DNA from: Macrostomum lignano
Lineage: Eukaryota
Assembly: GCA_002269645.1 (NCBI GenBank)
Contig: NIVC01000201.1
Coordinates: forward strand, 124,001-188,000
Length of the DNA: 64,000 nucleotides
Direction of reading: 5' to 3'
The notes beneath the pieces were generated by a model. It searched no databases and had not been told where the DNA came from. It saw nothing but the letters and a program-made list of their open reading frames with translations. Below, one piece after another: positions 1,339 through 20,894 of the stretch; position 1 is the first letter of the stretch; each line of letters starts with the position of its first letter. Made by a program: the position numbers and the translations under genes.

Positions 1339-1695
1339 CTAATCCTTGACCGGATCCGGGAAGCCTTCGCTCTCATTGATGAGCGCCCTCTCCAGGATGA
1401 TCTTGCCCTCCTTGTACTGCTGGCTCTCCTCGGTGGCGAACTCGTACACCCAGCCCAGCTTGGTCTTGCACTTCCTGCAGCTCACATCGCGAACCATGTG
1501 CCTGCCTGTGAGCATCACCCGGTCCTGCAGCTCGCTAGTGTCCAGGTTCACCACCCGGTTGAACAGGAAGGCCCTACCGGTGGCACCGGTGAACCGGGTG
1601 CTAATGAGCTGCTGCCGGTTGGTGAGGGGACAGTCGCAGTTGGCGCAGCTGAACACCCGCTCGCCGCCCATGTGCTCAATGTGCAGGCGGCCCAT
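1339..1695 (-). CDS. YPEL5: Yippee-like protein 5 (CTLH/GID E3 ligase subunit), single coding exon, 118 aa
   Basis: [24 protein letters not shown]...[14 protein letters not shown]...[46 protein letters not shown] closely follows the YPEL5 sequence I recall, with both CxxC zinc pairs; candidate splice acceptor gctttcag at about 1728. Confidence 0.95.
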
Positions 1696-1974
1696 GCTGT
1701 AGCTAGCATTGAATTCTGAGGATTTACTGAAAGCGGCGCAGTACCCAGCGGGGCATGCATTTTAGTGACGTTTTAGCTGGTTTTGATAACTAAATTTTTG
1801 AAAAACTAGAACGTCTACTCATTTTTCAGTAGTTTGTTTGCGCACTGTCACTTAAATTTAATATGGCAGCTAAAATTTGCTTTCCTTCCTCGGGGTTTAC
1901 CGCCTGAGGAGTATATCGGATTAAGAATGAACAACAAGCATTTAACTCGATGTACACAAGTGACCGCAAGATCG

Positions 1975-2240
1975 ACGAAAACTCAGCCTTGGGATTAACA
2001 GCGAAGAATTTAGGCCGCCTAATTTAGCTCAGCCAATGAGAGAGCAGTAAGGAGAGGGCAAAGTCAGACGGACGAAAACTCAGTCCAGGGGCAGGCCTAA
2101 TCTAGCTCAGCTAATGATAAAGTAGTAAGAAGACAGGCCCAATCTAGCTCAGCCAATGAGAGCGCAGTAAGGGGAACAGGCCCAATCTAGCTCAGCCAAT
2201 GAGAGAGCAGTAAGGAGAGGGCAAAGTCAGACGGACGAAA
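1975..2240. repeat. Short tandem repeats with several CCAAT boxes upstream of YPEL5
   Basis: aatctagctcagccaatgagag..cagtaagg occurs about four times; gacggacgaaa occurs twice. Confidence 0.75.
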
Positions 2241-2423
2241 GAGGAAAGCCTAACTGTTAATCGGCCTGGCTGGGGCGCCACCCTTTTTCTCTTGCTCGCT
2301 AAGCACAGGCACTGGATTTGACTTTTTTAGTTTCCTGAAATCTTTCATTTGCTTTTACTCGTAACATAACCCCAACCAGCACTGCTTCATTTCGCACATA
2401 CAAGCGCGCCAATGCTGTACGCA

Positions 2424-2585
2424 GGCACGCACTCATACACACGCTCACACAGGGTATACAGGTATCTACACTCTCTGCCTTGGGTGGGGGGGGGGTTCCC
2501 TCATGGCTGTGAAACAGAATTGAACCAGGGCTTAGGGGTCCTCGGGTGAGAGTCAGACGCGCTTACCCTCCCACTGGCAGGCGCC
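2424..2585 (-). mobile_element. Candidate tRNA-derived SINE
   Basis: Minus strand CCAGTGGGAGGGTAAGCGCGTCTGACTCTCACC...GGTTCAATTC has A-box-like and B-box (2517-2526) motifs. The body segment 2424-2462 recurs at about 14068-14112 and 14666-14711. Confidence 0.55.
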
Positions 2586-3029
2586 TTGGTGCAAGTCTTG
2601 AAGTTACTTAGCTAACAGAAATCAATACAGTACAAAGGAGAAACTACAGCACAAAAAACTTCATTAAAACCATCATTGTATTTTTTAGTGCACAAAACGC
2701 AAGCGCTAACAGTTAAAAGAACTATATTAATACAAAAAACAACAAGCAACAGGCACAGCGCAGATTGTAAGCTTGAGAAACCAGGACTCAAAGTTCAAAT
2801 GCGCAATTACTAGGAAATCATTAGTAGGCCGGACCTTGCAGGCTCAGAGATATTTGTTGACACAGGGAAATGAATAATGAAGGCTTGAAATAAGCCTCAC
2901 GTGGAAACTTTTTAATATGAAATTTAAATGGGTGGCAATTCCTAACGGGAAATCAAAGAAGGGGTATATCAGAATCCCAAGGATTTGGAAGGCTTAAAAC
3001 ACCAAACTAAGGATTAAATAAGCTTAGAA

Positions 3030-3450
3030 TTCTAGACTGGGGATTAGGAAGGTTGAATCCCAAAACAGGGATTAGAGAGAATTATAATCCCAAAATGAAG
3101 ATTAGGGAGAATTAGAATCCCCAAATGAGGATCAGAGAGAATTAGAATCCCAAAATGAGGATTATGGAGAATTAGAAACCCAAAACAGGGATTAGATAGA
3201 ATTAGAATCCCAAAATGAGGATTAGGAAGAATTAAAATCCCAAAATGAGGATCAGAGAGAATTAGAATCCCAAATGAGGATCATGGAGAATTAGAACCCC
3301 AAAATGAGGATCAGAGATAATTAGAATCCCAAAACGAGGATTAGCGAGAATTGGAGGCTCAAAATGAGGATTACGGAAAATTACGAGATTGGGGATTAAA
3401 AGTTAGGTAGAATACCAAAATGGGGATAGGGGAGAATTAGAATCGCAGAA
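3030..3450. repeat. 30-bp minisatellite
   Basis: ggattagagagaattagaatcccaaaatga units. Confidence 0.9.
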
Positions 3451-3565
3451 TAAGGATTAAAGCTGGAACGCATTTTAAAACCCAAGCTGAGAATGGGACT
3501 TCGGCAGCCGGTCATTGAGCACGCGGGATTCTGGAAGGTTGGGCACAAAAAGTCGACCAGCCGCA

Positions 3566-5797
3566 TCAGCCGTGATCAGCCACAAACTTGACGCCCTCGT
3601 GGGTGACAGCGAACTGCCGGAGGTCGGCGGCCATCCGCAGGTCGATGCCGCTACCGTCCAGGGCCGCCTCGGCCTGCCGCCGCAGCAGCTCCACCGAGGC
3701 GTCGCTGACGGTGGGCCCGGCTCCGTCCGTGTAGCGCTGGCTGAAGTGAGTCAGCAGGAGGCATTCGGCACCGACTTGGCGGGCAAACTGGGCAGCCATG
3801 GCGGGCGTGGAGTGGCCCTTCTCCAAGCAGCTGTCAGTCAGCGAATTGTCCCCGGTGGCCTCGTGAACCACGCAGTCGACGCCGCGGCACATGTCGGCTG
3901 CCAGGTCGGAGTTGCAGGTGTCGCCGAAGACTGCCAGGCGAAGCGGCGGGGGCGGAGCAGCTGTCACCTGCGGCGGCATCCGGGTTTCCGGATCGGCTGA
4001 CTGGGTACGGACTTAAGGTCTCGGGGACTCAAGGACTCAGGGACTCAGGGACTCAAGGACTCAGACACTCAAGGACCCAGACACTCAAGGACTCAGACAC
4101 TCAAGGATTCAGACACTCAGGGACCCAGACACTCAAGGACTGACTATTGGACTGAGGTAACGCATCGAATCGAGGCTAGTAGGCTCAGCGACACGGATTT
4201 CAGACGACTCAGGGACTTCGGGTGAATCAGGGGCTTCAGGTGACTGGGGATTCAGGGGCCTCAGGTGACTGGGGATTCAGGGGCCTCAGGGGCCTCAGGT
4301 GACTGGGGATTCAGGGGCCTCAGGGGCCTCAGGTGACTGGGGATTCAGGGGCCTCAGGTGACTGGGGATTCAGGGGCCTCAGGTGACTGGGGATTCAGGT
4401 GCCTCAGGTGACTGGGATTCAGGGGCCTCAGGGGCCTCAGGGGCCTCAGGTGACTGGGGATTCAGGGGCCTCAGGTGACTGGAGATTCAGGGGCTTCAGG
4501 TGACTAGGGATTTAGGGGCTTCAGGTGACTCTGGGGATTCTGTAACTGTAAATAACTAAGGAAATTCAGGGACTTCAGGTGACTGGGGGGTCTCAGAGAC
4601 TGCAGATGAATCAGAGCTTTAACTAAGGGAATTTAGTTTCCAACTTAAGTTAGAGCCTAACCCAAGCCCATTCTCACTCACCTGCTCAGGCCTGATAACA
4701 GCCCCAGATCGGGTCGTCACGGTTCGGCCTCTCTTCAATTCGCCCAGCAGGGCAGATTCGCCAGATCTGGCCAGGCCCAGCTGGTATGCCAGCTCCGGCT
4801 GCAAGTGCCCGGTGGCCGGAGCCCGGGTGGCCAGCCTGTACCCCACACAGGGCACCCGGTGGCTGAGCGCGGCTGCCTGCACTGTGACCCCGCCGCTAGC
4901 GGCAGCGGCCTCCTGGTCGGACACGACAGTCCAAGTGCCGTCGGGTTGTCGGTCGGCATCGGCGATGTCAATCTCGTAGGGCAGGGCGGGCAGCAGGCCT
5001 TGGCGGCTGTCACTGGCGACTGCGGCAAGGATGGCCTCCATCTGGGCATTCTCGGGCGCCGGCATCAGCAGGGGGACGCCTGCGAGCTCTCGGATGGCGA
5101 GGCGAATCTGAGCAGTTCGGAGAGAGTTTTGAAAGTGAGGAGGATTGTAGCGGCTGCTTAAGCGACAGTTTGTCTGAGCACTGCGTGTTTAAACAGGCAA
5201 CGGATTGTGGATCAATGACGAGGGCCAGAGCCCAGTGGTCCAGCGCGGCGCTCTCGAGTGCCACCAGCCAGCCGCCTTGCGAGCCAACCCCTCAAACCAT
5301 ACAAGTTTCTACACCCGCAGTGGCAACTATCACAGAGAGGAGAGCAGAGAGGAGACAAGAGAGAAGGGGAGAGAGGAGATGAGGCAAGAGGAGACTCAGC
5401 CTAGAGTTGCTTTCGAGATGAAGCAGAGTACAGACTCGGGGGACCACCCCGACCTCACCCCGACCAGATCGCTTCTAGCATAAGCCAGACTCTGCCGCAG
5501 GAACTGCCGGGTACCGGGCGGCCCGCACACGGTGAGCACCGAGCCGGCCTCGCAGCGACCGCCGCCCAGGGTGCTGATAAGGCCCGGCAGGCCGAAGCTG
5601 TGATCGCCGTGCAGGTGTGTGATGAAGATGCGCGAGATTCGGCCCAGCTTCACCGGCGAGCGCATCAGCTGCACCTGAATAGACTCGCCGCAGTCGAACA
5701 GCCAGCAGTCGCCGTCGGCATGGAACCTGACGATCAGGCCGGAGGCGCAGCGGTGCGGCGACGGGTACGAGCTGGCTGTGCCCAGGAAGATCAGGTC
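3566..5797 (-). CDS. ELAC1: Short-form ribonuclease Z (RNase ZS, ELAC1-like metallo-beta-lactamase fold); exons 5797-5459, 5107-4682, 3967-3566; start codon not identified
   Basis: Motifs DLIFLGTASSYPSPHR, WLFDCGE, THLHGDH, HRVPCVGY, FGDT, HEAT, HST and THFSQRY. GT-AG junctions are all phase 0 (339+426+402 nt). The first exon begins ctgcag|GAC CTG ATC. Confidence 0.9.
4020..4590. repeat. Intronic minisatellites in RNase Z intron 2
   Basis: ggactcagacactcaa units followed by ggggcctcaggtgactggggattca units. Confidence 0.9.
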
Positions 5798-5814
5798 CTG
5801 CAGGGGCGGCGAGC

Positions 5815-6410
5815 TGGCTGAGGAGCGATTCTCATGGGGTGGCTGAGGGGCGATTCTCATGGGGTGGCTGAGGGGCGATTCTCATGGGGTGGCTGAGGGG
5901 CGATTCTCATGGGGTGGCTGAGGGGCGATTCTTATGGGGTGGCTGAGGGGCGATTCTTGTGGGGTGGCTGAGGGGCGATTCTTGTGGGGTGGTTGAGGGG
6001 CGATTCTTAGGGAGTGGCTGAGGGGCGATTCTTATGGAGTGGTTGAGGGGCGATTCTTAGGGAGTGGCTGAGGGGCGATTCTTATGGAGTGGTGGAGGAG
6101 CGATTCTTAGGGAGCGGCTGAGGGGCGATTCTTTTGGGGTGGCTGAGGGGCGATTCTTATGGAGTGGTGGAGGAGCGATTTTTCTGGGGTGGCTGAGGGG
6201 CGATTCTTTTGGGGTGGCTGAGGGGCGATTCTTTTGGGGTGGCTGAGGGGCGATTCTTATGGAGTGGTGGAGGAGCGATTCTTCTGGGGTGGCTGAGGGG
6301 CGATTCTTTTGGGGTGGCTGAGGGGCGATTCTTATGGGGTGGTGAGAGGCGATTCTCTAGGGTAACTGAGGGGCAATTCTCTGGGGTAACTGAGGGGCGA
6401 TTCTGTAGAA
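5815..6410. repeat. 25-bp minisatellite directly upstream of the RNase Z first acceptor
   Basis: ggggcgattcttatggggtggctga units. Confidence 0.93.
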
Positions 6411-7494
6411 TGACTGGCGGCCCATAGCAAAAAAGAACAAACAATAAACCAGAAAATTTGAGCGACAAAATGTTCTTATAAATAAGCAACTCTTTCCATT
6501 TTATTCCTCTGAAGGTAAGCAAAATATTGAAACAAATTAAAACAAACTATTGAATTAATGCAGAAGGAAATGAATATCTACATGCACAATAGAGGATAAC
6601 ATATCGCAGTGTCGAGTTGCTGATTGTTAATCAATGTATAGCAGTATAGGGAGATCATAAAAAGCTATATGGCTAAAATCGAGAAAGAAGCTAAAAAACA
6701 TGATAAATCACAGAAGCCAACAACAAACTTGCACGCCAAGCCGAAAAAAACATCGGGAATATCTAAAAAAAGTTATCTTAGAAACGTAAAAAATAGTTGC
6801 TTTCGTTAGAATAGAATTCTGCTACACCGTACTACTGACTGGTTGGTAAGTAGTGAAGTTTGAACATTCAATAATTACTATTTGGAGTAAAAACAAGACA
6901 TGAAGATCACATCAGAGCCTGGAGACGACAGTGAAACACAGTGGGGTCTCTCGATAAAAAACTGGGCTTTTCGGCTCTTTCAACAAGACTGAGACCGACT
7001 GGGCACAAATATTGAGGGGTAGAAAGTAAAACGAAATTTGTATGCAAAAAACTGACTGCAAATAGGCTAGCAAAATAGAAATATATAATACTACTCAGTA
7101 CCAGTAGACTATAAAAGCATTACTATTTAAAATCTGCTTGAATGAAAACAATAAGATAGACTCAGCTCAGCTAAGAATGACAATGAGAAAAAGGCCTTTA
7201 TTTAATTAGTTTACAAGGCAGAATAATGCGATGACAGGGCAAACAGATTTGTACAGAAGGAGAAAATATATTGTAAAGATTTATTAGTGAGTTTTAAATA
7301 TCAGGCTAACATCCCGCAGGAATATTTAGCACTAAAGAGTAATAAAATTTGATGACATAAATGAAAAAATGACATAAAATGGCTGTACACAGGTTGAGTT
7401 GAGGAATTATGATACTGAGCTAAGCCAATTGTAGAGAATGTATCCGTACTTCGACTTGGAGAGCTAAGCTTTATAAACATTAGATTAGATAGAG

Positions 7495-7930
7495 TTTGTG
7501 GTGGGCGCTAGAGAGCCAGTCTACATTGGGGTGGTGGGTGCTGGGTGAGAGCCAGTGTACGTTGTGGTTTTGGGCGCTGGGTAAGAGCCAGTGTACATTG
7601 GGGTGGTGGGCGCTGGGTAAGAGCCAGTGTACATTGGGGTGGTGGGTGCTGGGTAAGAGCCAGTGTACATTGGGCTGGTGGGTGCTGGGTAAGAGCCAGT
7701 GTACATTGGGGTGGTGGGCGCTGGGTAAGAGTTAGTGTACATTGGGGTGGTGGGCACTGGGTAAGAGTTAGTGTACATTGGGCTGGTGGGTGCTGGGTAA
7801 GAGCCAGTGTACATTGGGGTGGTGGGCACTGGGTAAGAGTTAGTGTACATTGGGGTGGTGGGTGCTGGGTAAGAGTTAGTGTACGAGCTACATTGGGGTG
7901 GTGGGCGCTGGGTAAGAGTCAGTGTACATT
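7495..7930. repeat. 36-bp minisatellite
   Basis: gtacattggggtggtgggtgctgggtaagagccagt units. Confidence 0.93.
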
Positions 7931-8389
7931 AAAGTGGTGAAGGCAAGAGAAATGTGCATAGATTCATGGCGAATTCCTCCGATGTGTTAAGTTTATGAAG
8001 CTCCTAGAAAAAGGCTACCGGCAATCACAAACGCATTTATAAAGTTAAAAGTACAGAATTTGCAGCGGAAAATTGTGTTAAAATGATCTGGAAAGGCCAC
8101 ATAAAAGTAGTAGCTATCTACAAGAATCGAGCGGAAGTGCTGGGCAAAGTTCAATCAACCTTGACAATTAGGCATCCATGGCAAACAGCAAGCGATGGAA
8201 TCCAGTTGGTAGAATTAAAAAACGCAATCAGGTGTGCCAACCAATGCGTGAACAATCAGCGAATGCAGATGCTGGTGAATCAGACAGTTGATGACATGCC
8301 GGTGAGTAAAGGGACAATTCTCGAAAATTTCACTGAGCCAGTAGAAAGCTCAAGTATAGGTCAGCAGCAGACGGGTCGGTGGGTCAGCA

Positions 8390-8875
8390 TCACACACGGG
8401 TCGCGTCAGTAGGACAGCATCACACACGGGTTGGTGGGCCAGCGGGTCAGCAGCACGCGGGCTAGTGGGTCAGCTGGTCAGCACCACGCGGGTCAGTGGG
8501 TCAGCAGCACGCGGTCAGTAGCACGCGGGTCAGCAGACGCGGGTCAGTAGCACGCGGGTCAGCAGACGCGGGTCAGTAGCATGCGGGTCAGTAGCACGCG
8601 GGTCAGCAGACGCGGGTCAGTAGCATGCGGGTCAGCAGCACGCGGGTCAGCAGACGCGGGTCAGTAGCATGCGGGTCAGCAGCACGCGGGTCAGTGGGTT
8701 AGCAGCACGCGGGTCAGTGGGTCAGCAGCACGCGGGTCAGCAGCACGCGGGTCAGTGGGTCAGCAGCACGCGGGTCAGTAGCACGCGGGTCAGTGGGTCA
8801 GCAGACGCGGGTCAGTAGCACGCGGGTCAGCAGACGCGGGTCAGTAGCACGCGGGTCAGCAGCACGCGGGTCAGT
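8390..8875. repeat. 13-15-bp minisatellite
   Basis: gggtcagcagcacgc units. Confidence 0.92.
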
Positions 8876-8913
8876 AGGTCGTCACTGCGCAAGTACCCAA
8901 CACTGGCGGCCTC

Positions 8914-11900
8914 TCAAGCCGCTTTCTCAATCCGCAGCGGCTCCTCGCGGGCATCCTCGTACACCGCCGTCACGGACACGACCGACAGGCCAGCGTAGCC
9001 AACGAACTCGGCTTCGTCAGCGAAAACCCCCGACGGTAGCGGTGTGTTCAGCGGGAACACTCGCTCTCGAGCCCACGGCGCGTCGATAAGGGTCTGCAGG
9101 GCCCGCGAGATGACCACCATGTCGTGCATGCTGACCAGGCCGGACTCCACCAGCTCCATGGTGATGCCGTTGGCGCGGTCCTTGCCAACAGCGAAGTCGA
9201 AGCTGATGTCCTGCAGCTCGGCGAGCCCAGCGACCGGCTGCGAGCCGAGCGTTGACGAAGAGGCTCCGGAGGCCGGCGCCGTGGCGGCGTTGTTGCTGGA
9301 TCCGTCCAGAGCGGCGGCGGCGGCGGCGGAGGTCAGGGCGCCAATAATGGAGCCGCCGCCGGCGCCAGCGACCAGACTGTCGGGGCCGGAGAGAAGAGCG
9401 GCGGCGCCGGCCGGAGACGGGGCGTCGTCTTTGCGCTTGCGCAGGCGGAACTTCAGGTAGACGCCGCGGCAGCCCGGCCTGCCGGACAGGGCGGCGCGGA
9501 GCCACGGCAGCCGGCTGTCCGAGTTGTCCTGGTCGACCTCTGCCGCTAACTCTGACACAGGGGCGGCGGCCGTCTCGGTGGCGGCAGGAGCGGCGGCGGT
9601 GGCGCCCTCGGGAACTGCCACTCGTCCTCTTCGTCGTCCTCTTTGTCGTCATTGTCCTCGACGTCGCGTTGACTGATGGCGACAGGCGTTGCCGAGTCGA
9701 CGCTGTTGCTGTCGTTCTGCTGCTGAGAGCGCCGCTTGCCAGACAGCTGCGACAGGTGATGGTGCAGGTGGTGCGAGTCGCCGCTGAGCACGGCTCGGAC
9801 AATGTACTCCTTGTCCTTGGCTTTGGCCTGCGGGGCGGGCGAGTGGGTGACTTCTGTGTAGGGAGATACTGCCATAGGGATATTTCTATTGGGGATATTC
9901 ACATAGTTATGACATTTACGGAGGGAGATATTCACATGGGGAGATATTCACATGGGATATACTCACATAGGGATATACTCACATAGGGATATACTCACAT
10001 AGGGATATACTCACATAGGGATATACTCACATAGGGATATACTCAAACGGGGATAATATTGGGATAAAATCACATGGGGTGATATTCACATGGGGATATA
10101 CTCACATAGGGATATACTCACATAGGGATATACTCAAACGGGGAAAATATTTGGAAAAAATCACATGGGGTGATATTCACATGAGGAGATATTCACATGA
10201 GGAGATATTCACATGAGGAGATATTCACATGGGGAGATATTCACATGGGGAGATATTCACATGGGGATATACTCACATAGGAATATACTCACATGGGGAT
10301 ATACTCACATAGGGATATACTCACATAGGGATATACTCACATAGGGATATACTCAAACGGGGATAATATTGGGATAAAATCACATGGGGTGATATTCACA
10401 TGGGGATATACTCACATAGGGATATACTCACAGGGATATACTCACATAGGGATATATTCAAACGGGGATAATATTGGGATAAAATCACATTGGGTGATAT
10501 TCACATGGGGATATACTCACATAGGGATATAACTCACATAGGGATATACTCACATAGGGATATAACTCACATAGGGATATACTCACATAGGGATATACTC
10601 ACATAGGGAAATACATAGGGATATACTCACATAGGGATATAACTCACATAGGGATATAACTCACATAAGGATATACTCACATAGGGAAATACATAGGGAT
10701 ATACTCACATAGGGATATAACTCACATAGGGATATAACTCACATAGGGATATACTCACATAGGGAAATACTCACATAGGGATATACTCACATAGGGATAT
10801 AACTCACATAGGGATATACTCACATAGGGAAATACTCACATAGGGATATACTCACATAGGGAAATACTCACATGGGAATAATTTTGGGATAAAATCACAT
10901 GGGGATCTATTCACACGGGGAGATTTTCCCCCATAGAGTGTACCTACGGTGCTTCATCATCTAGCCTATAATCTCACCTTAATAAAGGGATGCTGCAGCA
11001 TCTGCTTGGCGCTCGGCCTCTCCGAGTCATTCCGTACCAGACAAGCGGACACGAACTTGCGAAACTTATGCCCGTAAGCGGAGTACTGGCCCGGCTTCTC
11101 CTCCACCGAGGCCAGGTTGGGTGGGTCATTGTTCAGCGTCAAGATGATCACCTTCAGTGGCGGGAATTTGGCGTAGGGTGCACTGCCGGTCACCAGCTCC
11201 AGAGCCGTAATGCCCAGACTCCAAATATCCGCCTTGGTAGTGTAGCCGTACTGGCGCTGCTCCATCACCTGGTGAGCGGATTTGCTTATTAAGCACTTTT
11301 ACTCTTCAATGCACTGCATTTTCCGACCTGCTAACAGTGAATATATACTTAAACTCTGTATAAATTACCTACTTATAATAGAAAAACAAGTAAATTATGC
11401 TTACATTACATAATATAGTTAGAAAATATATATAGATATTGTGACTGACCTACTGATAGTAGAAAAATACGCAAATAATGCAACTGATCTACTCATAGTG
11501 TAGAAAAATACGCTAATACTGCAACTGACCTGCTGGTAGTAGAAAAATACGTAAGTAATGCAACTGACCTACTGATAGTGTAAAAAATACGCTAATACTG
11601 CAACTGATCTACTGATAGTAAAAAAATACGTAAATATTGTAACTGACCATCTGATGGTAGAAAAAATACGTAAATAATGTAACTGACCCACTGATAGTAG
11701 AAAAATACGCAAATATTGTAATTGACCTACTGATAGTAGAAAAATACGCAAATATTGTAACTGACCCACTGATAGTAGAAAAATACGCAAATATTGTAAT
11801 TGACCTACTGATAGTAGAAAAATACGCAAATAATAAAACTGACCTACTGATAGTAGAAAAATACGCAAATAATGTAACTGACCTACTGATAGAAGAAAAA

Positions 11901-14008
11901 AAACGCCAAATCCATCCAACTATACTAAATCGACTATATTGAATGTTAAACGTCCACAGATAATATAAAAAACAATTTTCCAGAAGCATTTTATATCTCG
12001 TCAGGATTCTAGATGAACAAACTGAACGATTCGCACCTCAGGAGCCATCCAGCAGGGGGTGCCGACAAAGGTGTGCCTGGACACCGGATTAACGGACAAG
12101 CCGGTCAGCGGGTTGGTATTGATGAAGGCCGTGACACCGAAGTCGGCAATCTGAACGGACCCGTCATTCTTTAACAATATGTTGCCGCATTTTATGTCCC
12201 TGAAGGATAGGGTCGGGGTGCCACACGGACTGCTTTATAAGAAACTGAAAGCGCACTACAGCCTTTGCTGAGCTTTTCCACTCTCCTGAACCCTCTTCAT
12301 TTCCACTATTTCACCTTTCTACCCCTCCTTCTCCATCCTTCACTTCCAAAACCCGTCACTTTCTCAACCTTCACCTCCTACCCCTCACTTCCAAAACCCG
12401 TCACTTTCTCAACCTTCACCTCCTACCCATCACTTCCAAAACCCGTCACTTTCTCAACCTTCACCTCCTACCCCTCACTTTCAAAACCCGTCACTTTCTC
12501 AACCTTCACCTCCTACCCCTCACTTCCAAAACCCGTCACTTTCTCAACCTTCACCTCCTACCCCTCACTTTCAAAACCAGTCACTTTCTCAACCTTCACC
12601 TCCTACCCCCACTTCCAAAACCCGTCACTTTCTCAACCTTCACCTCCTACCCCTCACTTCCAAAACCCGTCACTTTCTTAACCTTCACCTCCTACCCCTC
12701 ACTTTCAAAACCCGTCACTTTCTCAACCTTCACCTCCTACCCCTCACTTCCAAAACCCGTCACTTTCTCAACCTTCACCTCCTACCCCTCACTTTCAAAA
12801 CCCGTCACTTTCTCAACCTTCACCTCCTACCCCTCACTTTTAAAACCCTTCACTTCCCCACCTTTCACTTCCCCACCCTTCACTTCCCCACCCTTCACTT
12901 CCCCACCTTTCACTTCCCCACCCTTCACTTCCCCACCTTTCACTTCCCCACCTTTCACTTCCCCACCTTTCACTTCCCCACCCTTCACTTCCCCACCCTT
13001 CACTTCCCCACCTTTCAGTTCCCCACCTTTCACTTCCCCACCTTTCAGTTCCCCACCCTTCACTTCCCCACCTTTCAGTTCCCCACCCTTCACTTCCCCA
13101 CCTTTCACTTCCCCACCTTTCACTTCCCCACCTTTCAGTTCCCCACCTTTCACTTCCCCACCTTTCAGTTCCCCACCCTTCACTTCCCCACCTTTCAGTT
13201 CCCCACCCTTCACTTCCCCATCCCTCACTTCCCCACCCTCTTTTCCCCATCCCTCAATTCCCTATCCATCACTTCCTCACCCCTCATTACCACCCTTCAC
13301 TTCCCCACCCCTCATTCCCTTCACTTCCCCACCCTTTACTTCTCCACCCTCCACTTCCCCACCCTTTACTTCTCCATCCTTCACTTCCCCACCCCTCAAA
13401 TCCGTTGTTCTCAATTCCAATTCCCTCTTTTCGCCTTGAATCAGTAATTTTATTTCAATTAAAAATAGCAGTCAATCACAGCCCGCAATTCACCTGTGCA
13501 CCAATCCGTTCTCGTGAATATACTGCAGGCCCTTGAGCACCTCTCGCACGATGGTAGCAATGGTATGCTCCTCAAACACCCCGTGCGCAATGCTCCTGGC
13601 AACCTTGACCTTGTTGATCACATCCAGCAGTGACCGCTCGCACAGATCCATCAGGATGAAGAGGAACTTGTCCTCGATGAAGCTGCCATAGTAGGCAACA
13701 ATATTCTCGTGTCGCAGCTTCTTCATGCCCTGCGTCTCCCGGTGCAGCTCGTCCATTGACACGGAGCTGCTGTCGAGGTTGACAACCTTGATGGCGATCT
13801 CGGCATTGTTGCGAGCGGGACAGATGGCCCGGTACACCTTGGAGGTGGCGCCAGTGCCCAGCAGCTTCTGCATGCTGTAGTTGGCCTTGCCTCGGGGCCA
13901 GGAGTCGCCGACAGCGGCAGCGGCAGCATTGAACATCGAAGTTGACGACGCGGTTGGGTGCAGCCGGCCGAGTAGCTGGTCATGCTGCTGCTGGGGCTGC
14001 TGCTGCAT
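8914..14008 (-). CDS. OXSR1: STE20-family kinase OSR1/SPAK (GCK-VI, fray-like) with C-terminal CCT domain; exons 14008-13494, 12199-12037, 11268-10978, 9827-8914; one-base frameshift near 9612-9616
   Basis: [18 protein letters not shown]|[12 protein letters not shown]...[14 protein letters not shown]|[18 protein letters not shown], then CCT-like LKFRLRK...[28 protein letters not shown]...FVGYAGLSV. Junction phases are consistent (515, 163, 291 nt). OXSR1 versus STK39 cannot be resolved. Confidence 0.88.
9860..10920. repeat. 17-bp minisatellite in kinase intron 3
   Basis: gggatatactcacatag units. Confidence 0.95.
11440..11900. repeat. About 39-bp minisatellite in kinase intron 2
   Basis: aactgacctactgatagtagaaaaatacgcaaatattgt units. 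Confidence 0.92.
12330..13400. repeat. 45-bp then 15-bp C-rich minisatellites in kinase intron 1
   Basis: ccctcacttccaaaacccgtcactttctcaaccttcacctcctac, then ccccacctttcactt. Confidence 0.95.
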
Positions 14009-14027
14009 ATCTGATTTTCAGGCAGGG

Positions 14028-14122
14028 CAGTTTGTCTTCTGACAGCATAAAATCAGACAGCCGTGCACTTTATTAAGGCACGTAATCATACACACGCTCA
14101 CGCAGGGTTTACAGAGGCCCTG
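14028..14122. repeat. 95-bp direct repeat, copy 1 (copy 2 at 14627-14721); carries minus-strand AATAAA
   Basis: cagtttgtcttctgacagc...ctttattaaggcacg...cagggtttacagaggccctg is present twice, 599 bp apart. Confidence 0.9.
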
Positions 14123-14418: not shown

Positions 14419-14626
14419 ATTTATCCATTAACTTTGGGGGTGCAAGATAAGACAAGGGGGGTGCAGTGCGCGACTGAGGAAAGAGGCGAGAACGGAGAGC
14501 CAATCAGAACGCACGAAGCAAGGGAGAGAGAGATAAGAATAACAAGATTGAGCTAGACAGAGAGAGAGAAAACAGTAAACAGAGACAGGTGAAGGTGAAC
14601 TAAAGAAATGACTAGGAAAGTCGCGA

Positions 14627-14721
14627 CAGTTTGTCTTCTGACAGCTGAAAATCAGACAGCCGTGCACTTTATTAAGGCACGCAATCATACACCCGCTCAC
14701 GCAGGGTTTACAGAGGCCCTG
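14627..14721. repeat. 95-bp direct repeat, copy 2
   Basis: Near-identical to 14028-14122. Confidence 0.9.
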
Positions 14722-15299: not shown

Positions 15300-15885
15300 A
15301 TTACCAAACCCAAAAATAAACCCAAACCTAAACACAAAACTGTAAACCCAAACCTAAATCCGAATTTTAAACCCGAAAATCGAAATCCAAATTTTAAACC
15401 CAAAAACCTAAATTCAAACTGTAAACCCAAAAACTTAAATCCAAATTTTAAACCCAAAAACCTAAATTCAAACTGTAAACCCAAAAACCTAAATTCAAAC
15501 TGTAAACCCAAAAACCTAAATTCAAACTGTAAACCCAAAAACTTAAATCCAAATTTTAAACCCGAAAACCTAAATCCAAATTTTAAACCCGAAAACCTAA
15601 ATCCAAATTTTAAACCCAAAAACCTAAATCCAAACTGTAAACCCAAAAACCTAAATCCAAATTTTAAACCCGAAAATTGAAATCCAAATTTTAAACCTAA
15701 AAACCTAAATCCAAATTTTAAACCCAAAAACCTAAATTTAAATTTTAAACCCAAAAATCGCAATCAAAATTTTAAACCCAAAAACCTAAATTCAAATTTT
15801 AAACACAAAAACATAAATCCAAATTTTAAACACAAAAACATAAATGCAAACTAAACCCAAAAACCGAACTCCAAACCCAAACGCC
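15300..15885. repeat. 27-bp A-rich minisatellite just 3' of the TRIP13 stop
   Basis: aaacccaaaaacctaaatccaaatttt units. Confidence 0.93.
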
Positions 15886-15929
15886 AACCTAAATTGGGAC
15901 AGTGAATAGTGGCGCTCCTCTTTAATCTT

Positions 15930-18900
15930 TCACTTCCCGTTGGTACTAACACCGACAGGAGCGGCAGCAACGGCAGCCGTTTCCATGGCAACCAGGAACG
16001 AATCCAACAGCAGGCCGGCGGCGCCGTCATTGCGGAACCGGCGACAGTCGGCCAGGCTGACGGAGTGGGCGAGCAGCGGTAGCTTGCGGAGCCTGCGGCC
16101 GCTCAGGCCACGACAGGCGCGGCTGAGAGCCAGCAGGCGGAAGCTGCACCGGAAGGTGTCGCTCTGAGCCAGCCGCTCTGAGGCGGCGCCGCCTAGCAGG
16201 TTCAGCTCCGAGTAGGCGTAGATTGCGGGCGGCTCCGCTGCGCCCGAAGCTGACGCCGACGACACGACACCGGCTCGAAGAAGCTCGCGAAGACAGCTGG
16301 CCAGAATCTCGTAAACAGCTGGCTCGTCTGGCAGCCCGATGTGCAGGCAGAGGTCGCAGCTGGGCCGGAGTTGCCAGGTTTTTAATATTGGCATGCCTGT
16401 CTCCCTGAGTCTGTGTCTCCCCCGCCCCCAATCCTGTGTCACTGAGTCTGTGCCCCCCAATCCTGTGTCACTGAGTCTGTGCCCCCCCCAATCCTGTGTC
16501 CCTGAGTCTGTGTCACTGAGTCTGTGCCCCCCAATCCTGTGTCACTGAGTCTGTGCCCCCCAAATCCTGTGTCACTGAGTCTGTGCCCCCAAATCATGTG
16601 TCACTGAGTCTGTCACTGAGTCTGTGCCCCCCTCAATCCTGTGTCACTGAGTCTGTGCCCTCCAATCCTGTGTCACTGAGTCTGTGCCCCCCCAATCCTG
16701 TGTCACTGAGTCTGTGCCCCCCCAATCCTGTCACTGAGTCTGTGTCACTGAGTCTGTGCCCCCAATCCTGTGTCACTGAGTCTGTGCCCCCCCAATCCTG
16801 TGTCACTGAGTCTGTGCCCCCCTCAATCCTGTGTCACTGAGTCTGTGCCCCCCAATCCTGTGTCACTGAGTCTGTGTCACTGAGTCTGTCACTGAGTCTG
16901 TGTCACTGAGTCTGTGCCCCCCAATCCTGTGTCACTGAGTCTGTGTCACTGAGTCTGTGCCCCCCAATCCTGTGTCACTGAGTCTGTGCCCCCCTAATCC
17001 TGTGTCACTGAGTCTGTGCCCCCCCAATCCTGTGTCACTGAGTCTGTGCCCCCCCCCCAATCCTGTGTCACTGAGTCTGTGCCCCCCCCAATCCTGTGTC
17101 ACTGAGTCTGTGTCACTGAGTCTGTGCCCCCCCCAATCCTGTGTCACTGAGTCTGTGCCCCAAAATCATGTGTCACTGAGTCTGTCCTGTGTCACTGTCT
17201 CACTGAGTCTGTCACTGAGTCTGTGTCACTGAGTCCGTCCCTCCAATCATGTGTCACTGAGTCTGTCACTGAGTCTGTGCCCCCCCCTTAATCCTGTGTC
17301 ACTGAGTCTGTGCCCGCCAATCCTGTGTCACTGAGTCTGTGTCACTGAGTCTGTGCCCCCCAATCCTGTGTCACTGAGTCTGTGTCACTGAGTCTGTGCC
17401 CCCCAATCCTGTGTCACTGAGTCTGTGCCCCCCCAATCCTGTGTCACTGTCTCACTGAGTCTATGTCACTGAGTCTGTCCCTCCAATCATGTGTCACTGA
17501 GTCTGTCACTGAGTCTGTGCCCCCCAATCCTGTGTCACTGAGTCTGTGCCCCCCAATCCTGTGTCACTGAGTCTGTGTCACTGAGTCTGTGCCCCCCAAT
17601 CCTGTGTCACTGAGTCTGTGCCCCCCAATCGTGTGTCACTGAGTCTGTGCCCCCAAATCATGTGTCACTGAGTCTGTGTCACTGAGTCTGTCACTGAGTC
17701 TGTGCCCCCCCTCAATCCTGTGTCACTGAGTCTGTGCCCCCCAATCCTGTGTCACTGAGTCTGTGCCCTCCAATCCTGTGTCACTGTCTCACTGAGTCTG
17801 TCACTGAGTCTGTGTCACTGAGTCCGTCCCTCCAATCATGTGTCACTGAGTCTGCCACTGAGTCTGTGCCCCCCTCAATCCTGTGTCACTGAGTCTGTGC
17901 CGGCCAATCCTGTGTCACTGAGTCTGTGCCCTCCAATCCTGTGTCACTGTCTCACTGAGTCTGTCACTGAGTCTGTGTCACTGAGTCTGTCCCTCCAGTC
18001 ATGTGTCACTGAGTCTGTCACTGAGTCTGTCACACTGAGCCTGTGTCACTGAGTCTGTCCCCCAATCCTGTCTCCCTGAGTCTGTGTCACTGAGTCTGTG
18101 TCCCCCCAATCCTGTCTCACTGAGTATGTGTCACTGAGTCTGTGTCCCCCCAATCCTGTCTCACTGAGTCTGTGTCCCAACAATCCTGTCTCACTGAGTA
18201 TGTGTCACTGAGTCTGTGTCCCCCCAATCCTGTCTCACTGAGTCTGTGTCCCCCCAATCCTGTCTCACTGAGTCTGTGTCCCCCCAATCCTGTCTCACTG
18301 AGTCTGTGTCACTGAGTATGTGTCACTGAGTCTGTCCCCCCAATCATGTAACACTGAGTCTGTCCCCCCAATCCTGTGTCATTGAGTCTGCCCTTCCCCC
18401 AATCATGTAACACTGAGTCTGTCCCCCCAATCCTGTGTCATTGAGTCTGCCCTTCCCCCAATCCTGTCTCACTGAGTCTCTCTGCTCACTTACCTGTCTC
18501 TTTTGAGTTAAACTTTTCTCCTCGACTGACTCCTGTATCACTCAGACTGCCTGTCTTTAGACTACGCCTGTCTCACCGAAACTGTAATTCTGCCATCCAC
18601 ACCTGTCTTTGTGGACTCACCGATCCAGGAAGGCCTCATCAATGGCCCCAGTGATATTGCTGGTTGTCAGCACCAGCACATTGGGCCACCGTTTCACAGC
18701 GTCCAGCTGGGTGAGCAGGGCGTTCACGACTCGAATGGAATCGCTGGGGTCGCTGCCTGACAGACAGGCCTGGCGGGCGGCGCTCAGACTCTCAACTTCA
18801 TCAACTAGCACGAACACCAGGCAGCGCTCGTCGGCCAAGTGTTCGTGCAGCTTGTCAAACATTTTCTGGACAAGTTTGCCGCTCTCAGAGAACCACTTGG

Positions 18901-19051
18901 AGAACAGGCTGTGGCTGTTCACCTCTACGAGGCAGCCGTAGTCGTATCTGGCGGGGGTGGAAATTGAAATTAGCAAAGCGAAGGCTTGAGATCAACTGCT
19001 GAAAGAGAGACATTTCCAAGCAGAGCAACAGGAACGTGGACAGACAGAGAA

Positions 19052-19096
<45 letters not shown>

Positions 19097-19098
19097 AG

Positions 19099-19177
<79 letters not shown>

Positions 19178-19228
19178 GGGCAGGCAGACAGACAGACAGA
19201 CAGGCAGACAGACAGACAAACAAACAAC

Positions 19229-19263
<35 letters not shown>

Positions 19264-20894
19264 CACAGACAGACAGACAGACAGACAAACGGGCAGGCAG
19301 ACAGACAGACAGGCAGACAGACAAACAAACAACACAGACAGACAGAAACAGACACCCGACATGCACCTGTCCGCCATGTGAATGCTGAGCTTGTGCGCCA
19401 GCGCCCTGCACAGGCTGGTCTTGCCGGTGCCGGGCTCGCCGTGCAGCAGGATGAGGCGGTTGCAGTTCACCACGGCTGGGTCCACCCCGGCGTCGGCGAA
19501 GCGCAGGGTGGAGTGCGCGTAGCCCAGCAGGCGGGGCTTCACGTCGGCGCCGAACATGAGGCTCTCCCAGACGCCTTCGAGGCTGGCGGCGGGCAGCACC
19601 AGGGTAGCGGCGGCCGAGACCTCCTCGCCGTCGTGGTTGATCCGCTCGGTGGCCGGTTGCTCCTCTTCGCAGAGCTGGTAGAGAGCCACCTGGCGGCGGA
19701 GGACGGGATACGCAGTGGTCTTAAAAAATTGCTTGATGAAGTCTGTCCCACTAAGTTGGTCTTTTAAAGGGTTCTTTTTGAGTACTTCCATGGCCCTTGA
19801 GTCTAGAACCTGTCTGTTCCATTCAGTGCAGTCAAATTTGCCTGTCTTATTACGGGGTATTGCTGAGATGTCAAGGCTCATGGGGTATTGCTGAGATGCC
19901 AAGGCTTACTTGGGGAATTACTGAGATGTCAAGGCTTACTGGGGGGGGGGGTTGCTGAGATGTCAACGCTTACTGGGGGAATTACTGAGATGTAAACGCT
20001 TACGGGTTGCTGAGATGTCAAGGCTTACTAGGGTTAGGGTAATTGCTGAGATGCCAAGGCTGATATGGGTATTGCTGAGATGCCAAGGCCCATAGGGGTA
20101 TTGCTGAGATGCCAAGGCTCATAGGGGTATTGCTGAGATGCCAAGGCCCATAGGGCTATTGCTGAGATGCCAAGGCTCATAGGGGTATTGCTGAGATGCC
20201 AAGGCCCATAGGGCTATTGCTGAGATGCCAAGGCTCATAGGGGTATTGCTGAGATGCCAAGGCCCATAGGGCTATTGCTGAGATGCCAAGGCTCATAGGG
20301 GTATTGCTGAGATGCCAAGGCCCATAGGGCTATTGCTGAGATGCCAAGGACGATGGATGGTGCTGCTGAAATACCGAGGCTCAAAGGGGATGCTGTTTGT
20401 TATCTTGGACTAGAAAGCTGGATTTTAGGGCTGGTGCTCTTTTTCTTAAAATATTATTTTCTTCAAGAAACAAACAGTACTGACTATAAAAGGCTTTCTA
20501 TATGAAAAAAGTTATTAAGTTCTCTGTTGCATCTCTAACGCAGCTATAAGATTGCCAGTTCGCATGCTAAATGCTTCCGAGAAGCTGCTCGCACCTCAAG
20601 CTGACAGTCCCGCACTCTCAGCCGCCGTCCCGTGAGCTTATCGCTCAGGTCAACAAAGGTCAATGCCACAACTTCATTGTGCAGATCCTCAGTCTGGGGC
20701 ACACTGAGGCGCTCGCCAACCGTCACCCGATCAATGGACAAGCGGACAAACTGGACCACCGCCTGGACAATGGCAGCGACATCCTCGGAGCCCGCGCTGT
20801 TGGAGAACTGCGATCGACGCGCTTCAACAACCAGACGGTGCAACTGAGGCTGAGGTGTACGCTGCTGCGGAGTTACCGACGGCGTGGAGGTCAT
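15930..20894 (-). CDS. TRIP13: Pachytene checkpoint AAA+ ATPase TRIP13/Pch2; exons 20894-20595, 19689-19367, 18947-18621, 16359-15930 (459 aa; an upstream in-frame ATG at 21008 is possible)
   Basis: Walker [34 protein letters not shown], Walker [42 protein letters not shown]. The N-terminal [11 protein letters not shown]...EDVAAIV matches the TRIP13 N-domain pattern. Exons total 1380 nt with matching phases. Confidence 0.93.
16400..18480. repeat. About 30-bp minisatellite filling TRIP13 intron 3
   Basis: tgtgtcactgagtctgtgcccccccaatcc units. Confidence 0.96.
19040..19352. repeat. (GACA)n microsatellite in TRIP13 intron 2
   Basis: Direct reading of the sequence. Confidence 0.97.
19860..20360. 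repeat. 29-bp minisatellite in TRIP13 intron 1; related units recur at about 43170-43860
   Basis: gctgagatgccaaggctcataggggtatt units. Confidence 0.92.

What the first reader, a model, noticed from the sequence alone, without database searches (positions are those of the whole stretch)
1339..20894. Candidate four-gene trans-spliced operon: TRIP13 - OSR1/SPAK - ELAC1 - YPEL5
Seen: four unrelated conserved genes lie head-to-tail on the minus strand, with stop-to-start gaps of about 1.9, 3.1 and 1.9 kb. Each downstream gene has an AG acceptor close to its start (aatcag|atATG at 14010, ctgcag| at 5797, ctttcag at about 1728). An AATAAA lies about 50 bp upstream of the kinase start. The spacers contain intron-like minisatellites. 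Known: flatworms resolve polycistronic transcripts by SL trans-splicing. Inference: one transcription unit linking a meiotic/spindle-checkpoint ATPase, an ion-homeostasis kinase, a tRNA-repair nuclease and a CTLH subunit. Counter-evidence: CCAAT repeats at about 2030-2200 could be a separate YPEL5 promoter.
Basis: inference. Interest (0 to 1): 0.7.

Follow-up and report, generated by a model that had tools for sequence, protein, structure and literature searches.

The report
Known flatworm trans-spliced gene cluster
The four genes are real and lie head-to-tail in the flatworm Macrostomum lignano, where the public genome annotation already joins the first three into one trans-spliced transcription unit, so this is an ordinary example of a known arrangement.

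Summary
The window is Macrostomum lignano scaffold NIVC01000201.1 (assembly Mlig_3_7). All four genes, their minus-strand order and the gaps (1.92, 3.12 and 1.84 kb) are confirmed.

The deposited 5'-partial ELAC1 coding sequence starts at 5797, right after ctgcAG. The YPEL5 coding sequence starts next to ctttcAG (first exon base 1726). The kinase acceptor at 14010 could not be checked.

Spliced-leader (SL) trans-splicing and operons are published for this species. About 30% of its genes are SL-spliced and about 15% are in operons, whose spacers are often inflated by repeats.

GenBank locus tags settle most of the question. TRIP13 and the kinase here are Mlig034454g2 and g3. In a second copy of the locus, TRIP13, kinase and ELAC1 are g5, g6 and g7. 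That prefix names an RNA-seq transcription unit that the annotators cut at SL and poly(A) peaks.

YPEL5 carries other prefixes, so its membership is open. TRIP13 is itself flagged as trans-spliced. The same-strand run continues past the window into TRM13 and a DUF5588 gene.

The parts
15930..20951 (-). TRIP13/PCH2-like AAA ATPase gene (GenBank BOX15_Mlig034454g2, PAA88116.1). Exons 20951-20595, 19689-19367, 18947-18621, 16359-15930. ATG at 20894, stop at 15930-15932.
   Evidence: The model reproduces P0249 exactly. Pfam gives AAA and AAA_lid_TRIP13_C. The gene is named TRIP13, flagged TRANSSPLICED and neoblast-enriched in the supplement of PMC5816591.
14011..15929 (-). Spacer 1, from TRIP13 to the kinase. 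It holds a 27-bp minisatellite (15317-15875) and an AATAAA doublet at 14938/14921, the likely TRIP13 poly(A) signal. A ~95-nt element is duplicated at 14720-14620 and 14120-14020, each copy carrying AATAAA (14673, 14074). The candidate acceptor AG is at 14012-14011.
8914..14008 (-). OSR1/SPAK-like STE20 kinase gene (BOX15_Mlig034454g3, PAA88115.1). Exons 14008-13494, 12199-12037, 11268-10978, 9827-8914. A 1-nt deletion in a C run (9612-9610) makes the deposited product stop at 9546 (416 aa, no OSR1_C). The OSR1_C reading frame continues to 8914.
5798..8913 (-). Spacer 2, from the kinase to ELAC1. Minisatellites lie at 8498-8877, 7498-7930 and 5815-6404. AATAAA occurs at 7285, 7202 and 6505. 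The acceptor ctgcAG ends at 5798.
3566..5797 (-). ELAC1 (short tRNase Z) gene. Exons 5797-5458, 5106-4682, 3967-3566, giving 388 aa. There is no genomic start codon in the mature mRNA for the conserved N-terminus; the AUG at the end of the SL is in frame.
   Evidence: The deposited CDS (P0244) starts at 5797. The model is 98% identical to the 388-aa P0123. The acceptor is identical in all three copies.
1727..3565 (-). Spacer 3, from ELAC1 to YPEL5. It holds a 30-bp minisatellite (3055-3373), ATTAAA at 2916, and a tRNA-like/SINE-like stretch (about 2380-2620). A 43-bp tandem repeat with inverted CCAAT boxes lies at 2016-2218. The acceptor ctttcAG ends at 1727.
1339..1726 (-). YPEL5-like gene, a single coding exon. 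ATG at 1695, stop at 1339-1341. The deposited 5'-partial CDS starts at 1722 here and at the equivalent of 1725 in the other two copies.

Best explanation
The region is a head-to-tail cluster of conserved housekeeping genes in Macrostomum lignano whose mRNAs receive the 35-nt spliced leader.

Most likely, TRIP13, the OSR1/SPAK-like kinase and ELAC1 are transcribed as one long precursor. That precursor would start upstream of TRIP13, in the interval shared with the divergent WDR26-like gene. It is then cut into single-gene mRNAs by 3' cleavage and polyadenylation of each upstream gene, and by SL trans-splicing at the acceptor of each downstream gene.

The spacers are kb-long because minisatellites and SINE-like pieces have invaded them. 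For ELAC1, the AUG at the end of the SL supplies the start codon.

YPEL5 is also SL trans-spliced. Whether its pre-mRNA is the tail of the same precursor or starts at a promoter of its own in the 1.8-kb spacer is unresolved.

- Shown here: gene identity, order, exon models, and the coincidence of deposited mRNA/CDS starts with the acceptors.
- Taken from the public annotation: the shared transcription-unit prefix and the TRANSSPLICED flag.
- Inferred: co-transcription itself, the poly(A) sites and the kinase acceptor.
For: **Organism and source.**
- The locus is M. lignano Mlig_3_7, NIVC01000201.1.
- Published for this species: one 35-nt SL ending in ATG, 30% of genes SL-spliced, 15% in operons, and repeats inflating operon spacers (PMC8629364).
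- In the annotation, assembled 'transcriptional units' were cut into genes at SL-read and poly(A) peaks, and the name prefix follows the unit (PMC5730564).

**Locus tags.**
- Window: TRIP13 is Mlig034454g2 and the kinase is g3.
- Scaffold 616: TRIP13 is g5, the kinase g6 and ELAC1 g7.
- Scaffold 1020: the kinase is Mlig001820g1 and ELAC1 is g2.
- I predicted the kinase tags before looking them up.
- Protein accessions are consecutive, so no other coding gene is annotated between these genes.

**Acceptors.**
- The deposited 5'-partial CDS of ELAC1 starts directly after CTGCAG in all three copies.
- YPEL5 starts after TTTCAG+1 in two copies.
- TRM13 starts after TCTGCAG (L001) and DUF5588 after TTCCAG (L005).
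- A random position follows CAG only 2.4% of the time.

**Poly(A) site and arrangement.**
- The published TRIP13 mRNA length (2081 nt, TRANSSPLICED) fits polyadenylation after the AATAAA doublet. That leaves about 0.89 kb to the kinase start in all three copies, under the published 1-kb criterion.
- The arrangement is kept in three homeologous copies.
- Kinase->YPEL5 adjacency is kept in an older paralogous pair.
Against: - No SL-containing read, poly(A) read or precursor read was seen directly here. Everything about transcription is second-hand from locus tags, CDS starts and one supplementary table.
- The units were assembled from short reads mapped with up to 1000 multi-hits. Three near-identical copies and repeat-filled spacers could therefore be bridged artefactually.
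- A shared prefix only proves that at least one copy had a unit spanning TRIP13 to ELAC1.
- Stop-to-acceptor gaps remain 1.36, 1.71 and 1.39 kb after removing tandem repeats. The mode for operons in this species is ~100 bp.
- In scaffold 1020 the cluster is split into at least three units.
- The kinase acceptor AATCAG does not fit the motif. An SL joined there would put an out-of-frame AUG 2 nt before the real one.
- TRIP13 is listed as neoblast-enriched, while the other three genes are absent from the held, truncated part of that table.
Confidence: 0.5

Rival explanations
1. One longer operon. All four genes, and possibly TRM13 and the DUF5588 gene beyond the window, come from a single precursor. 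The annotation splits YPEL5 off only because short-read assembly breaks in repeat-rich spacers.
For: - YPEL5, TRM13 and DUF5588 also have deposited CDS starts at acceptor-like sites.
- PMC8629364 states that RNA-seq units tend to split in repeat-rich intergenic parts of operons.
- In the later v3 transcriptome the TRIP13 copies are numbered g1, g5 and g13. That implies 4 to 8 'genes' per copy under the same prefix.
- With ATTAAA at 2916 as the ELAC1 poly(A) signal, and with the tandem and SINE-like repeats removed, the ELAC1-YPEL5 distance is roughly 0.8-1.0 kb.
- There are no opposite-strand genes along the whole run.
Against: - YPEL5 has other prefixes (Mlig001443g2, Mlig027836g1) in both copies whose names are visible.
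- By the numbering, the window's unit holds exactly three genes, g2 to g4.
- The YPEL5-TRM13 gap is 3.2 kb.
- My attempt to obtain the TRM13 and DUF5588 locus tags failed.
- A 43-bp repeat with CCAAT boxes sits 300-500 nt upstream of the YPEL5 acceptor in all three copies.
Confidence: 0.25
2. No operon. Each gene has its own promoter in the kb-scale spacer, makes a monocistronic pre-mRNA with a short outron and is SL trans-spliced on its own. Most SL-spliced genes of this species behave this way. The shared unit prefix would then come from read-through transcripts or multi-mapped repeat reads.
For: - About 60% of SL-spliced genes in M. lignano are not in operons.
- The spacers are 10 to 30 times the modal operon spacer.
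- Regions of up to 2 kb upstream suffice for correct reporter expression in this species.
- The CCAAT repeat upstream of YPEL5 gives 6 ATTGG in 800 nt, against 1.8 expected.
- TRIP13 alone appears in the neoblast list.
- The units are split differently in the three copies.
Against: - Two copies of the locus share one unit prefix across TRIP13, kinase and ELAC1.
- No promoter-like feature was found in front of the kinase or ELAC1.
- The sequence just upstream of ELAC1 is a 590-bp minisatellite running up to 18 nt from the acceptor.
- The CCAAT enrichment is a by-product of one tandem repeat and is absent from the paralogous YPEL5 loci.
- The neoblast table is truncated.
Confidence: 0.25

Closest known systems
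Macrostomum lignano transcriptional units / SL operons (Wudarski et al. 2017, PMC5730564; Ustyantsev & Berezikov 2021, PMC8629364)
   Same: It is the same organism and the same single 35-nt SL ending in AUG. The acceptor motif [T/C]TNCAG is present at ELAC1 and YPEL5. The genes are conserved housekeeping genes, and the spacers are inflated by repeats. Three of the genes already share one unit prefix in GenBank.
   Different: Spacers here are at the long end: 1.4-1.7 kb from stop to acceptor after removing tandem repeats, against a ~100-bp mode. Whether the pairs pass the published 1-kb repeat-adjusted cut-off depends on poly(A) sites that I could only infer. YPEL5 is not in the same annotated unit.
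Caenorhabditis elegans SL2-type operons
   Same: Both involve a polycistronic precursor resolved by coupled 3'-end formation and SL trans-splicing. In both, an AAUAAA lies upstream of the next acceptor (here 66 nt before the kinase ATG).
   Different: C. elegans uses a dedicated SL2 for downstream genes and ~100-nt spacers (own knowledge, and as summarised in PMC8629364). M. lignano has one SL, and here the spacers are kb-scale. The AATAAA near the kinase lies in a duplicated repeat element, and the better candidate for the TRIP13 poly(A) signal is about 0.9 kb upstream.
Polycistrons of parasitic flatworms (e.g. the cytochrome b-c1 subunit 7 - enolase pair; PMC12582326)
   Same: Both are flatworm SL-resolved gene pairs, and the SL ends in an AUG that can act as initiator. 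That study notes chimeric gene models with intergenic distances up to several kb.
   Different: Those candidates were defined with a 300-bp cut-off. No orthologous TRIP13-kinase-ELAC1 arrangement in parasites was tested here.

Membership tests
SL-resolved operon, criteria of Ustyantsev & Berezikov 2021 for M. lignano | Immediately adjacent genes in the same orientation, with no opposite-strand transcript between them | tested here: met
   Called genes agree in three copies. Protein accessions are consecutive. No Pfam-bearing ORF or Rfam/tRNA hit lies in the spacers.
SL-resolved operon, criteria of Ustyantsev & Berezikov 2021 for M. lignano | The downstream gene is SL trans-spliced: ELAC1 and YPEL5 | tested here: met
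   This is indirect. Deposited 5'-partial CDS starts abut CTGCAG| (ELAC1, three copies) and TTTCAG|T (YPEL5). The chance of a position following CAG is 2.4%. SL reads themselves were not seen.
SL-resolved operon, criteria of Ustyantsev & Berezikov 2021 for M. lignano | The downstream gene is SL trans-spliced: the kinase | tested here: inconclusive
   The CDS is complete from the ATG, so its 5' end is not revealed. AATCAG|AT is conserved in three copies but is off-motif. An alternative acceptor CTGTCAG lies 31 nt upstream of the ATG.
SL-resolved operon, criteria of Ustyantsev & Berezikov 2021 for M. lignano | Repeat-adjusted distance between transcripts is below 1 kb | tested here: inconclusive
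   Stop-to-acceptor distances minus tandem repeats are 1360, 1713 and 1393 nt. With inferred poly(A) signals they fall to about 0.89, 0.8 and 0.8-1.0 kb. The true 3' ends and the RepeatMasker track are not available here.
SL-resolved operon, criteria of Ustyantsev & Berezikov 2021 for M. lignano | One polycistronic precursor (a transcriptional unit) covers the genes | tested here: inconclusive
   The shared prefix Mlig034454 for TRIP13, kinase and ELAC1 supports it for three genes. YPEL5 has other prefixes. Precursor reads were not inspected.
C. elegans-type (SL2) operon | Spacers of about 100 nt and a specialised downstream SL | tested here: not met
   Spacers are 1.8-3.1 kb. A single SL is described for the species.
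TRIP13/PCH2 AAA ATPase | AAA+ core plus a TRIP13-type lid domain, orthology to TRIP13 | tested here: met
   Pfam AAA at E = 1.7e-13. AAA_lid_TRIP13_C is on the deposited product. It is annotated as the TRIP13 homologue in the PMC5816591 supplement.
OSR1/SPAK (STK39/OXSR1) STE20 kinases | N-terminal kinase domain plus C-terminal OSR1_C (PF2/CCT) domain | tested here: met
   Pkinase at E = 2e-24 and OSR1_C at E = 6e-13. In this copy the two are separated by a 1-nt frame shift. They are intact in the 622-aa products of the other copies.
ELAC1 (short-form tRNase Z) | A ~360-390-aa metallo-beta-lactamase with the HxHxDH motif, closest to animal ELAC1 | tested here: met
   The 388-aa model carries THLHGDH. 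Lactamase_B, Lactamase_B_2 and tRNase Z hits appear. The best named hits are ELAC1 at 56-57% identity.
YPEL5 (Yippee-like 5) | Yippee zinc-binding domain, closest to YPEL5 orthologues | tested here: met
   PF03226 at E = 3.7e-11. Identity to YPEL5 of many animals is 73-78%.

The most novel reading that the evidence does not exclude
A six-gene (or longer) operon runs TRIP13 -> OSR1/SPAK kinase -> ELAC1 -> YPEL5 -> TRM13 -> DUF5588 from one promoter shared divergently with WDR26. Its spacers have been stretched to 1-3.5 kb by minisatellites without breaking co-transcription. At least ELAC1 and TRM13 would depend on the AUG donated by the SL for their start codon. This would be a clear worked example that flatworm operons tolerate kb-scale, repeat-invaded spacers. 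It would also mean that distance cut-offs of 0.3-1 kb undercount them.
Probability: 0.2. Interest if true: 0.35.

Novelty: already known. Interest (0 to 1): 0.15.

Why it matters
**Limited significance.**
- SL trans-splicing and operons in M. lignano are published.
- The public annotation already treats TRIP13, kinase and ELAC1 as genes cut out of one transcription unit.

**Practical value.**
- Anyone choosing a promoter for a transgene for the kinase, ELAC1 or YPEL5 should not assume that the 2 kb upstream holds it.
- '5'-partial' proteins in this GenBank record are often complete once the AUG of the SL is added, as for ELAC1.
- The 416-aa kinase and the 133-aa ELAC1 entries of this scaffold are annotation or assembly artefacts, not truncated genes.
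- If the long-spacer reading were proven, it would argue that distance-based operon counts in flatworms are too low.

Tried and rejected
- **Exact look-ups of the YPEL5 product.** The 118-aa and 128-aa forms found nothing. The deposited form here is 127 aa and 5'-partial.
- **Spliced kinase protein.** The contig tool did not accept it. I reached its record through the cluster table instead.
- **Transcript contigs.** I hoped for Logan or ENA contigs of M. lignano RNA carrying the SL or crossing a spacer. None are in the collection. The one ENA member of the ELAC1 cluster (P0248) is an unrelated, mis-clustered 50-aa product.
- **Locus tags of TRM13 and DUF5588.** A composite query returned only two UniRef DUF5588 entries without tags.
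- **Supplements.** Those of PMC8629364, PMC5730564 and PMC7336406 hold none of the four unit names. OXSR1, STK39, ELAC1, YPEL5 and TRMT13 are absent from the held part of the PMC5816591 table.
- **RNA genes.** There is no SL RNA gene, tRNA gene or Rfam family in the region.
- **Prefix meaning.** I first read the 'gN' suffix as possibly numbering paralogous copies only. I rejected this because unrelated genes (TRIP13, kinase, ELAC1) share a prefix and the numbering predicted the kinase tags.
- **44-nt GT..AG intron.** I considered one to repair the kinase frame. I rejected it because the other two copies differ by a single C in a homopolymer.
- **ELAC1 or TRIP13 remnants in the paralogous loci.** None were found at E <= 1e-3.
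- **Synteny in other flatworm species.** It could not be tested, because no other Macrostomum genome is in the collections.


Full report
**Where the window comes from**

The YPEL5 reading frame (1339-1695, minus strand) is 100% identical to deposited proteins of Macrostomum lignano. The 127-aa deposited form is encoded on NIVC01000201.1 of assembly GCA_002269645.1 (Mlig_3_7). Locus L004 position x equals window position 11723 - x, so the window is NIVC01000201.1:124,001-188,000.

The assembly holds two further copies of the whole locus, about 87-94% identical in the DNA alignments to L001. These are NIVC01001020.1 (L001, L007, L008) and NIVC01000616.1 (L005, L006, L009). This fits the known hidden polyploidy of the sequenced line.

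**The observation**

All four genes are real and on the minus strand.
- Pfam on the exon ORFs gives AAA, Pkinase + OSR1_C, Lactamase_B/tRNase Z and Yippee.
- Exon models with canonical GT..AG introns reproduce the deposited TRIP13 product exactly and the deposited 416-aa kinase product exactly.
- The ELAC1 model gives a 388-aa protein that is 98% identical to the one annotated in another copy.

The gaps are 1919, 3116 and 1839 nt from stop to proposed acceptor. The spacers contain minisatellites of 15-45 bp units.

On sequence alone they mean little, because a CAG occurs in 43% of random 35-nt stretches of this strand.

**What is published for this species**

Ustyantsev and Berezikov (PMC8629364) report the following.
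- There is one 35-nt SL, CGGTCTCTTACTGCGAAGACTCAATTTATTGCATG.
- 15% of genes are in operons.
- Operon spacers have a mode near 100 bp once repeats are subtracted. Their working rule is same strand, downstream gene SL-spliced, and repeat-adjusted distance under 1 kb.
- RNA-seq units tend to break in repeat-rich spacers.

Wudarski et al. (PMC5730564) describe the annotation behind the GenBank record.
- Assembled 'transcriptional units' often were precursor mRNAs holding several genes.
- The TBONE pipeline cut them at peaks of SL-containing reads and poly(A) reads.
- Names carry the prefix of the unit (units clustered at 95% identity share it) plus a gene number.

**Acceptors checked against the deposited models**
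- The deposited ELAC1 product of this scaffold (P0244) starts with DLIFLGT at window 5797, the first base after ctgcAG. The same holds in the other two copies.
- The YPEL5 products start one base after ctttcAG in two copies and four bases after it here.
- Both sites fit [T/C]TNCAG, which occurs in only 4.9% of random 35-nt stretches. A random position follows CAG 2.4% of the time.
- Beyond the window, TRM13 starts after tctgcAG in L001, although L004 and L005 read ctgctg at that spot. The DUF5588 gene starts after ttccAG in L005.

These 5'-partial coding sequences are what one expects when the SL has been trimmed and the reading frame stays open to the first base of the mRNA.

For ELAC1, the only in-frame genomic ATG upstream (5860) lies in the minisatellite that trans-splicing would remove. 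The AUG that ends the SL is in frame and gives M-DLIFLGT, which matches the N-terminus of ELAC1 in other animals (that comparison is from my own knowledge of the human protein).

The kinase CDS is complete from its ATG, so the deposited model does not reveal its 5' end.
- AATCAG|AT is conserved in the three copies but is off-motif.
- An SL joined there would place an out-of-frame AUG two bases before the real one.
- A second candidate, CTGTCAG, lies 31 nt upstream of the ATG.

**Locus tags**

Cluster tables gave the GenBank names.

| Scaffold | TRIP13 | Kinase | ELAC1 | YPEL5 |
|---|---|---|---|---|
| Window (201) | Mlig034454g2 | Mlig034454g3 | name hidden | name hidden |
| 616 | Mlig034454g5 | Mlig034454g6 | Mlig034454g7 | Mlig027836g1 |
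| 1020 | Mlig034454g1 | Mlig001820g1 | Mlig001820g2 | Mlig001443g2 |

I had predicted the three kinase tags from the numbering before looking them up. Unrelated genes can share a prefix only by lying in one assembled unit. The annotators' RNA-seq assembly therefore joined TRIP13, kinase and ELAC1 in at least one copy, and by the numbering (g2-g4, g5-g7) in two.

YPEL5 is in another unit in both copies whose names are visible. Accession numbers are consecutive within each scaffold, so nothing else is annotated between the genes.

**TRIP13 and the ends of the cluster**
- In the v3 transcriptome table of Grudniewska et al. 2018 (PMC5816591, supplement file 2), TRIP13 is Mlig034454.g5/.g1/.g13. 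It is 2081 nt long, flagged TRANSSPLICED and neoblast-enriched.
- The GenBank (v1) CDS start at 20951 does not follow an AG, so the SL site must be one of the AGs just upstream of the ATG.
- The 2081-nt length fits the scaffold 616 copy if the mRNA ends 15-19 nt after the AATAAA doublet, 641/658 nt past the stop, and starts at an acceptor 14-39 nt inside the v1 start.
- The doublet is at window 14938/14921. It leaves about 0.89 kb to the kinase start in all three copies.
It is a weaker candidate for the TRIP13 poly(A) signal.
- Upstream of TRIP13 the next gene is a divergent WDR26-like gene. It is 7-9 kb away in the other copies and 25 kb away here, because of an 8.6-kb minisatellite and a MULE transposase.
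- Downstream of YPEL5 the same-strand run continues with TRM13 and a DUF5588 gene.

**Spacer lengths against the published rule**
- After removing tandem repeats only, stop-to-acceptor distances are 1360, 1713 and 1393 nt.
- Subtracting 3' UTRs up to the best conserved AATAAA/ATTAAA (14921, 7202, 2916) and the repeats gives about 0.89, about 0.8 and about 0.8-1.0 kb.
- That is just inside the 1-kb rule but far from the 100-bp mode. The poly(A) sites for the kinase and ELAC1 are guesses.
- A recent survey of parasitic flatworms also notes polycistronic models with spacers of several kb (PMC12582326).

The CCAAT element is a 43-bp tandem repeat with two inverted CCAAT pentamers per unit. It has 3-6 units in the three copies, lies 300-500 nt upstream of the YPEL5 acceptor, and occurs nowhere else in the window or the paralogous loci. 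It could be part of a YPEL5 promoter feeding a short outron. However, the enrichment is a by-product of one repeat and is not conserved in the paralogous YPEL5 loci, so it is weak evidence either way.

**Conservation**
- The order kinase-ELAC1-YPEL5-TRM13-DUF5588 is the same in all three copies. These are young duplicates, so this says little.
- An older paralogous pair (YPEL5 80% identical, kinase 51-93% by exon) keeps kinase->YPEL5 on one strand with a 2.6-kb gap. It has no ELAC1 remnant, and RtcB rather than TRIP13 lies upstream.
- Other Macrostomum genomes are not in the collections searched.

**Verdict**

This is an SL trans-spliced gene cluster of M. lignano, and the annotation already treats TRIP13, kinase and ELAC1 as one transcription unit.
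- I give 0.5 to that three-gene operon with YPEL5 unresolved.
- I give 0.25 to a longer operon that includes YPEL5 and perhaps TRM13 and DUF5588.
- I give 0.25 to independent promoters with unit merging as an artefact.

Nothing about the functional combination of the genes goes beyond position. Novelty is 'already known' and interest is low.

Noticed in passing
window 9610-9612 (minus strand): The kinase of this copy has CCC where the other two copies have CCCC. The deposited product therefore stops at 9546 (416 aa, no OSR1_C), although the OSR1_C frame runs on intact to 8914. This is either a homopolymer assembly error or a real frameshift in one homeolog.
   Followed up: yes
window 5797-5860; L001 12716: ELAC1 has no usable genomic start codon in the mature mRNA. 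The terminal AUG of the SL is in frame with GAC CTG ATC (M-DLIFLGT). TRM13 in L001 looks the same (tctgcag|GAGACG). For YPEL5 the SL AUG is followed at once by UAA.
   Followed up: partly
window 3566-5797: The deposited ELAC1 product of this scaffold is only 133 aa, because the model reads through the first intron donor (5458). The three-exon gene is intact (388 aa). The scaffold 616 product (285 aa) ends in a shifted third exon.
   Followed up: yes
L004 13572-17193 and 18222-20384 (beyond window start): The same-strand run continues with a TRM13 tRNA methyltransferase and a DUF5588/TPR gene. In some copies both have 5'-partial CDS starts at acceptor-like sites.
   Followed up: partly
window 46288-48859 (+): A WDR26-like gene (LisH_WDR26, CTLH, WD40) is the divergent upstream neighbour of TRIP13. 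WDR26 and YPEL5 are both linked to the CTLH complex in other animals (own knowledge), so two CTLH-related genes lie within 45 kb. This is probably coincidence.
   Followed up: no
window 21120-29759: An 8.6-kb minisatellite (22/48-bp units, strong GC and AT skew) ends 170 nt upstream of the annotated TRIP13 5' end. The same array is only about 1 kb long in scaffold 1020.
   Followed up: partly
window 38330-39982 (-): A MULE-type transposase ORF (381 aa) with an adjoining 154-aa ORF is inserted between WDR26 and TRIP13 in this copy. No gene is called in the shorter equivalent interval of the other copies.
   Followed up: no
window 14620-14720, 14020-14120, 2380-2620: A ~95-nt element carrying AATAAA and an acceptor-like TTTTCAG/CTGTCAG is duplicated in spacer 1. 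A 39-nt core recurs in spacer 3, next to a stretch that looks like a tRNA T-arm. ARAGORN and Rfam find nothing. It is probably a SINE-like repeat.
   Followed up: partly
L003 1-1570 and 3686-7351; L002: The paralogous kinase->YPEL5 pair has RtcB (a tRNA ligase) upstream. Three tRNA-processing genes (ELAC1, TRM13, RtcB) therefore sit next to the two kinase-YPEL5 pairs. L003 also has a second 121-aa YPEL5-sized gene in inverted orientation at 13162-13527.
   Followed up: no
window 5815-6404; L003 2475-3535: The 25-bp minisatellite that runs up to the ELAC1 acceptor has a ~69% similar array upstream of the paralogous kinase.
   Followed up: no
window 52101-52607 and 54973-55479 (+): Two near-identical fibrinogen C-terminal domain ORFs lie 2.9 kb apart, a local tandem gene duplication.
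   Followed up: no
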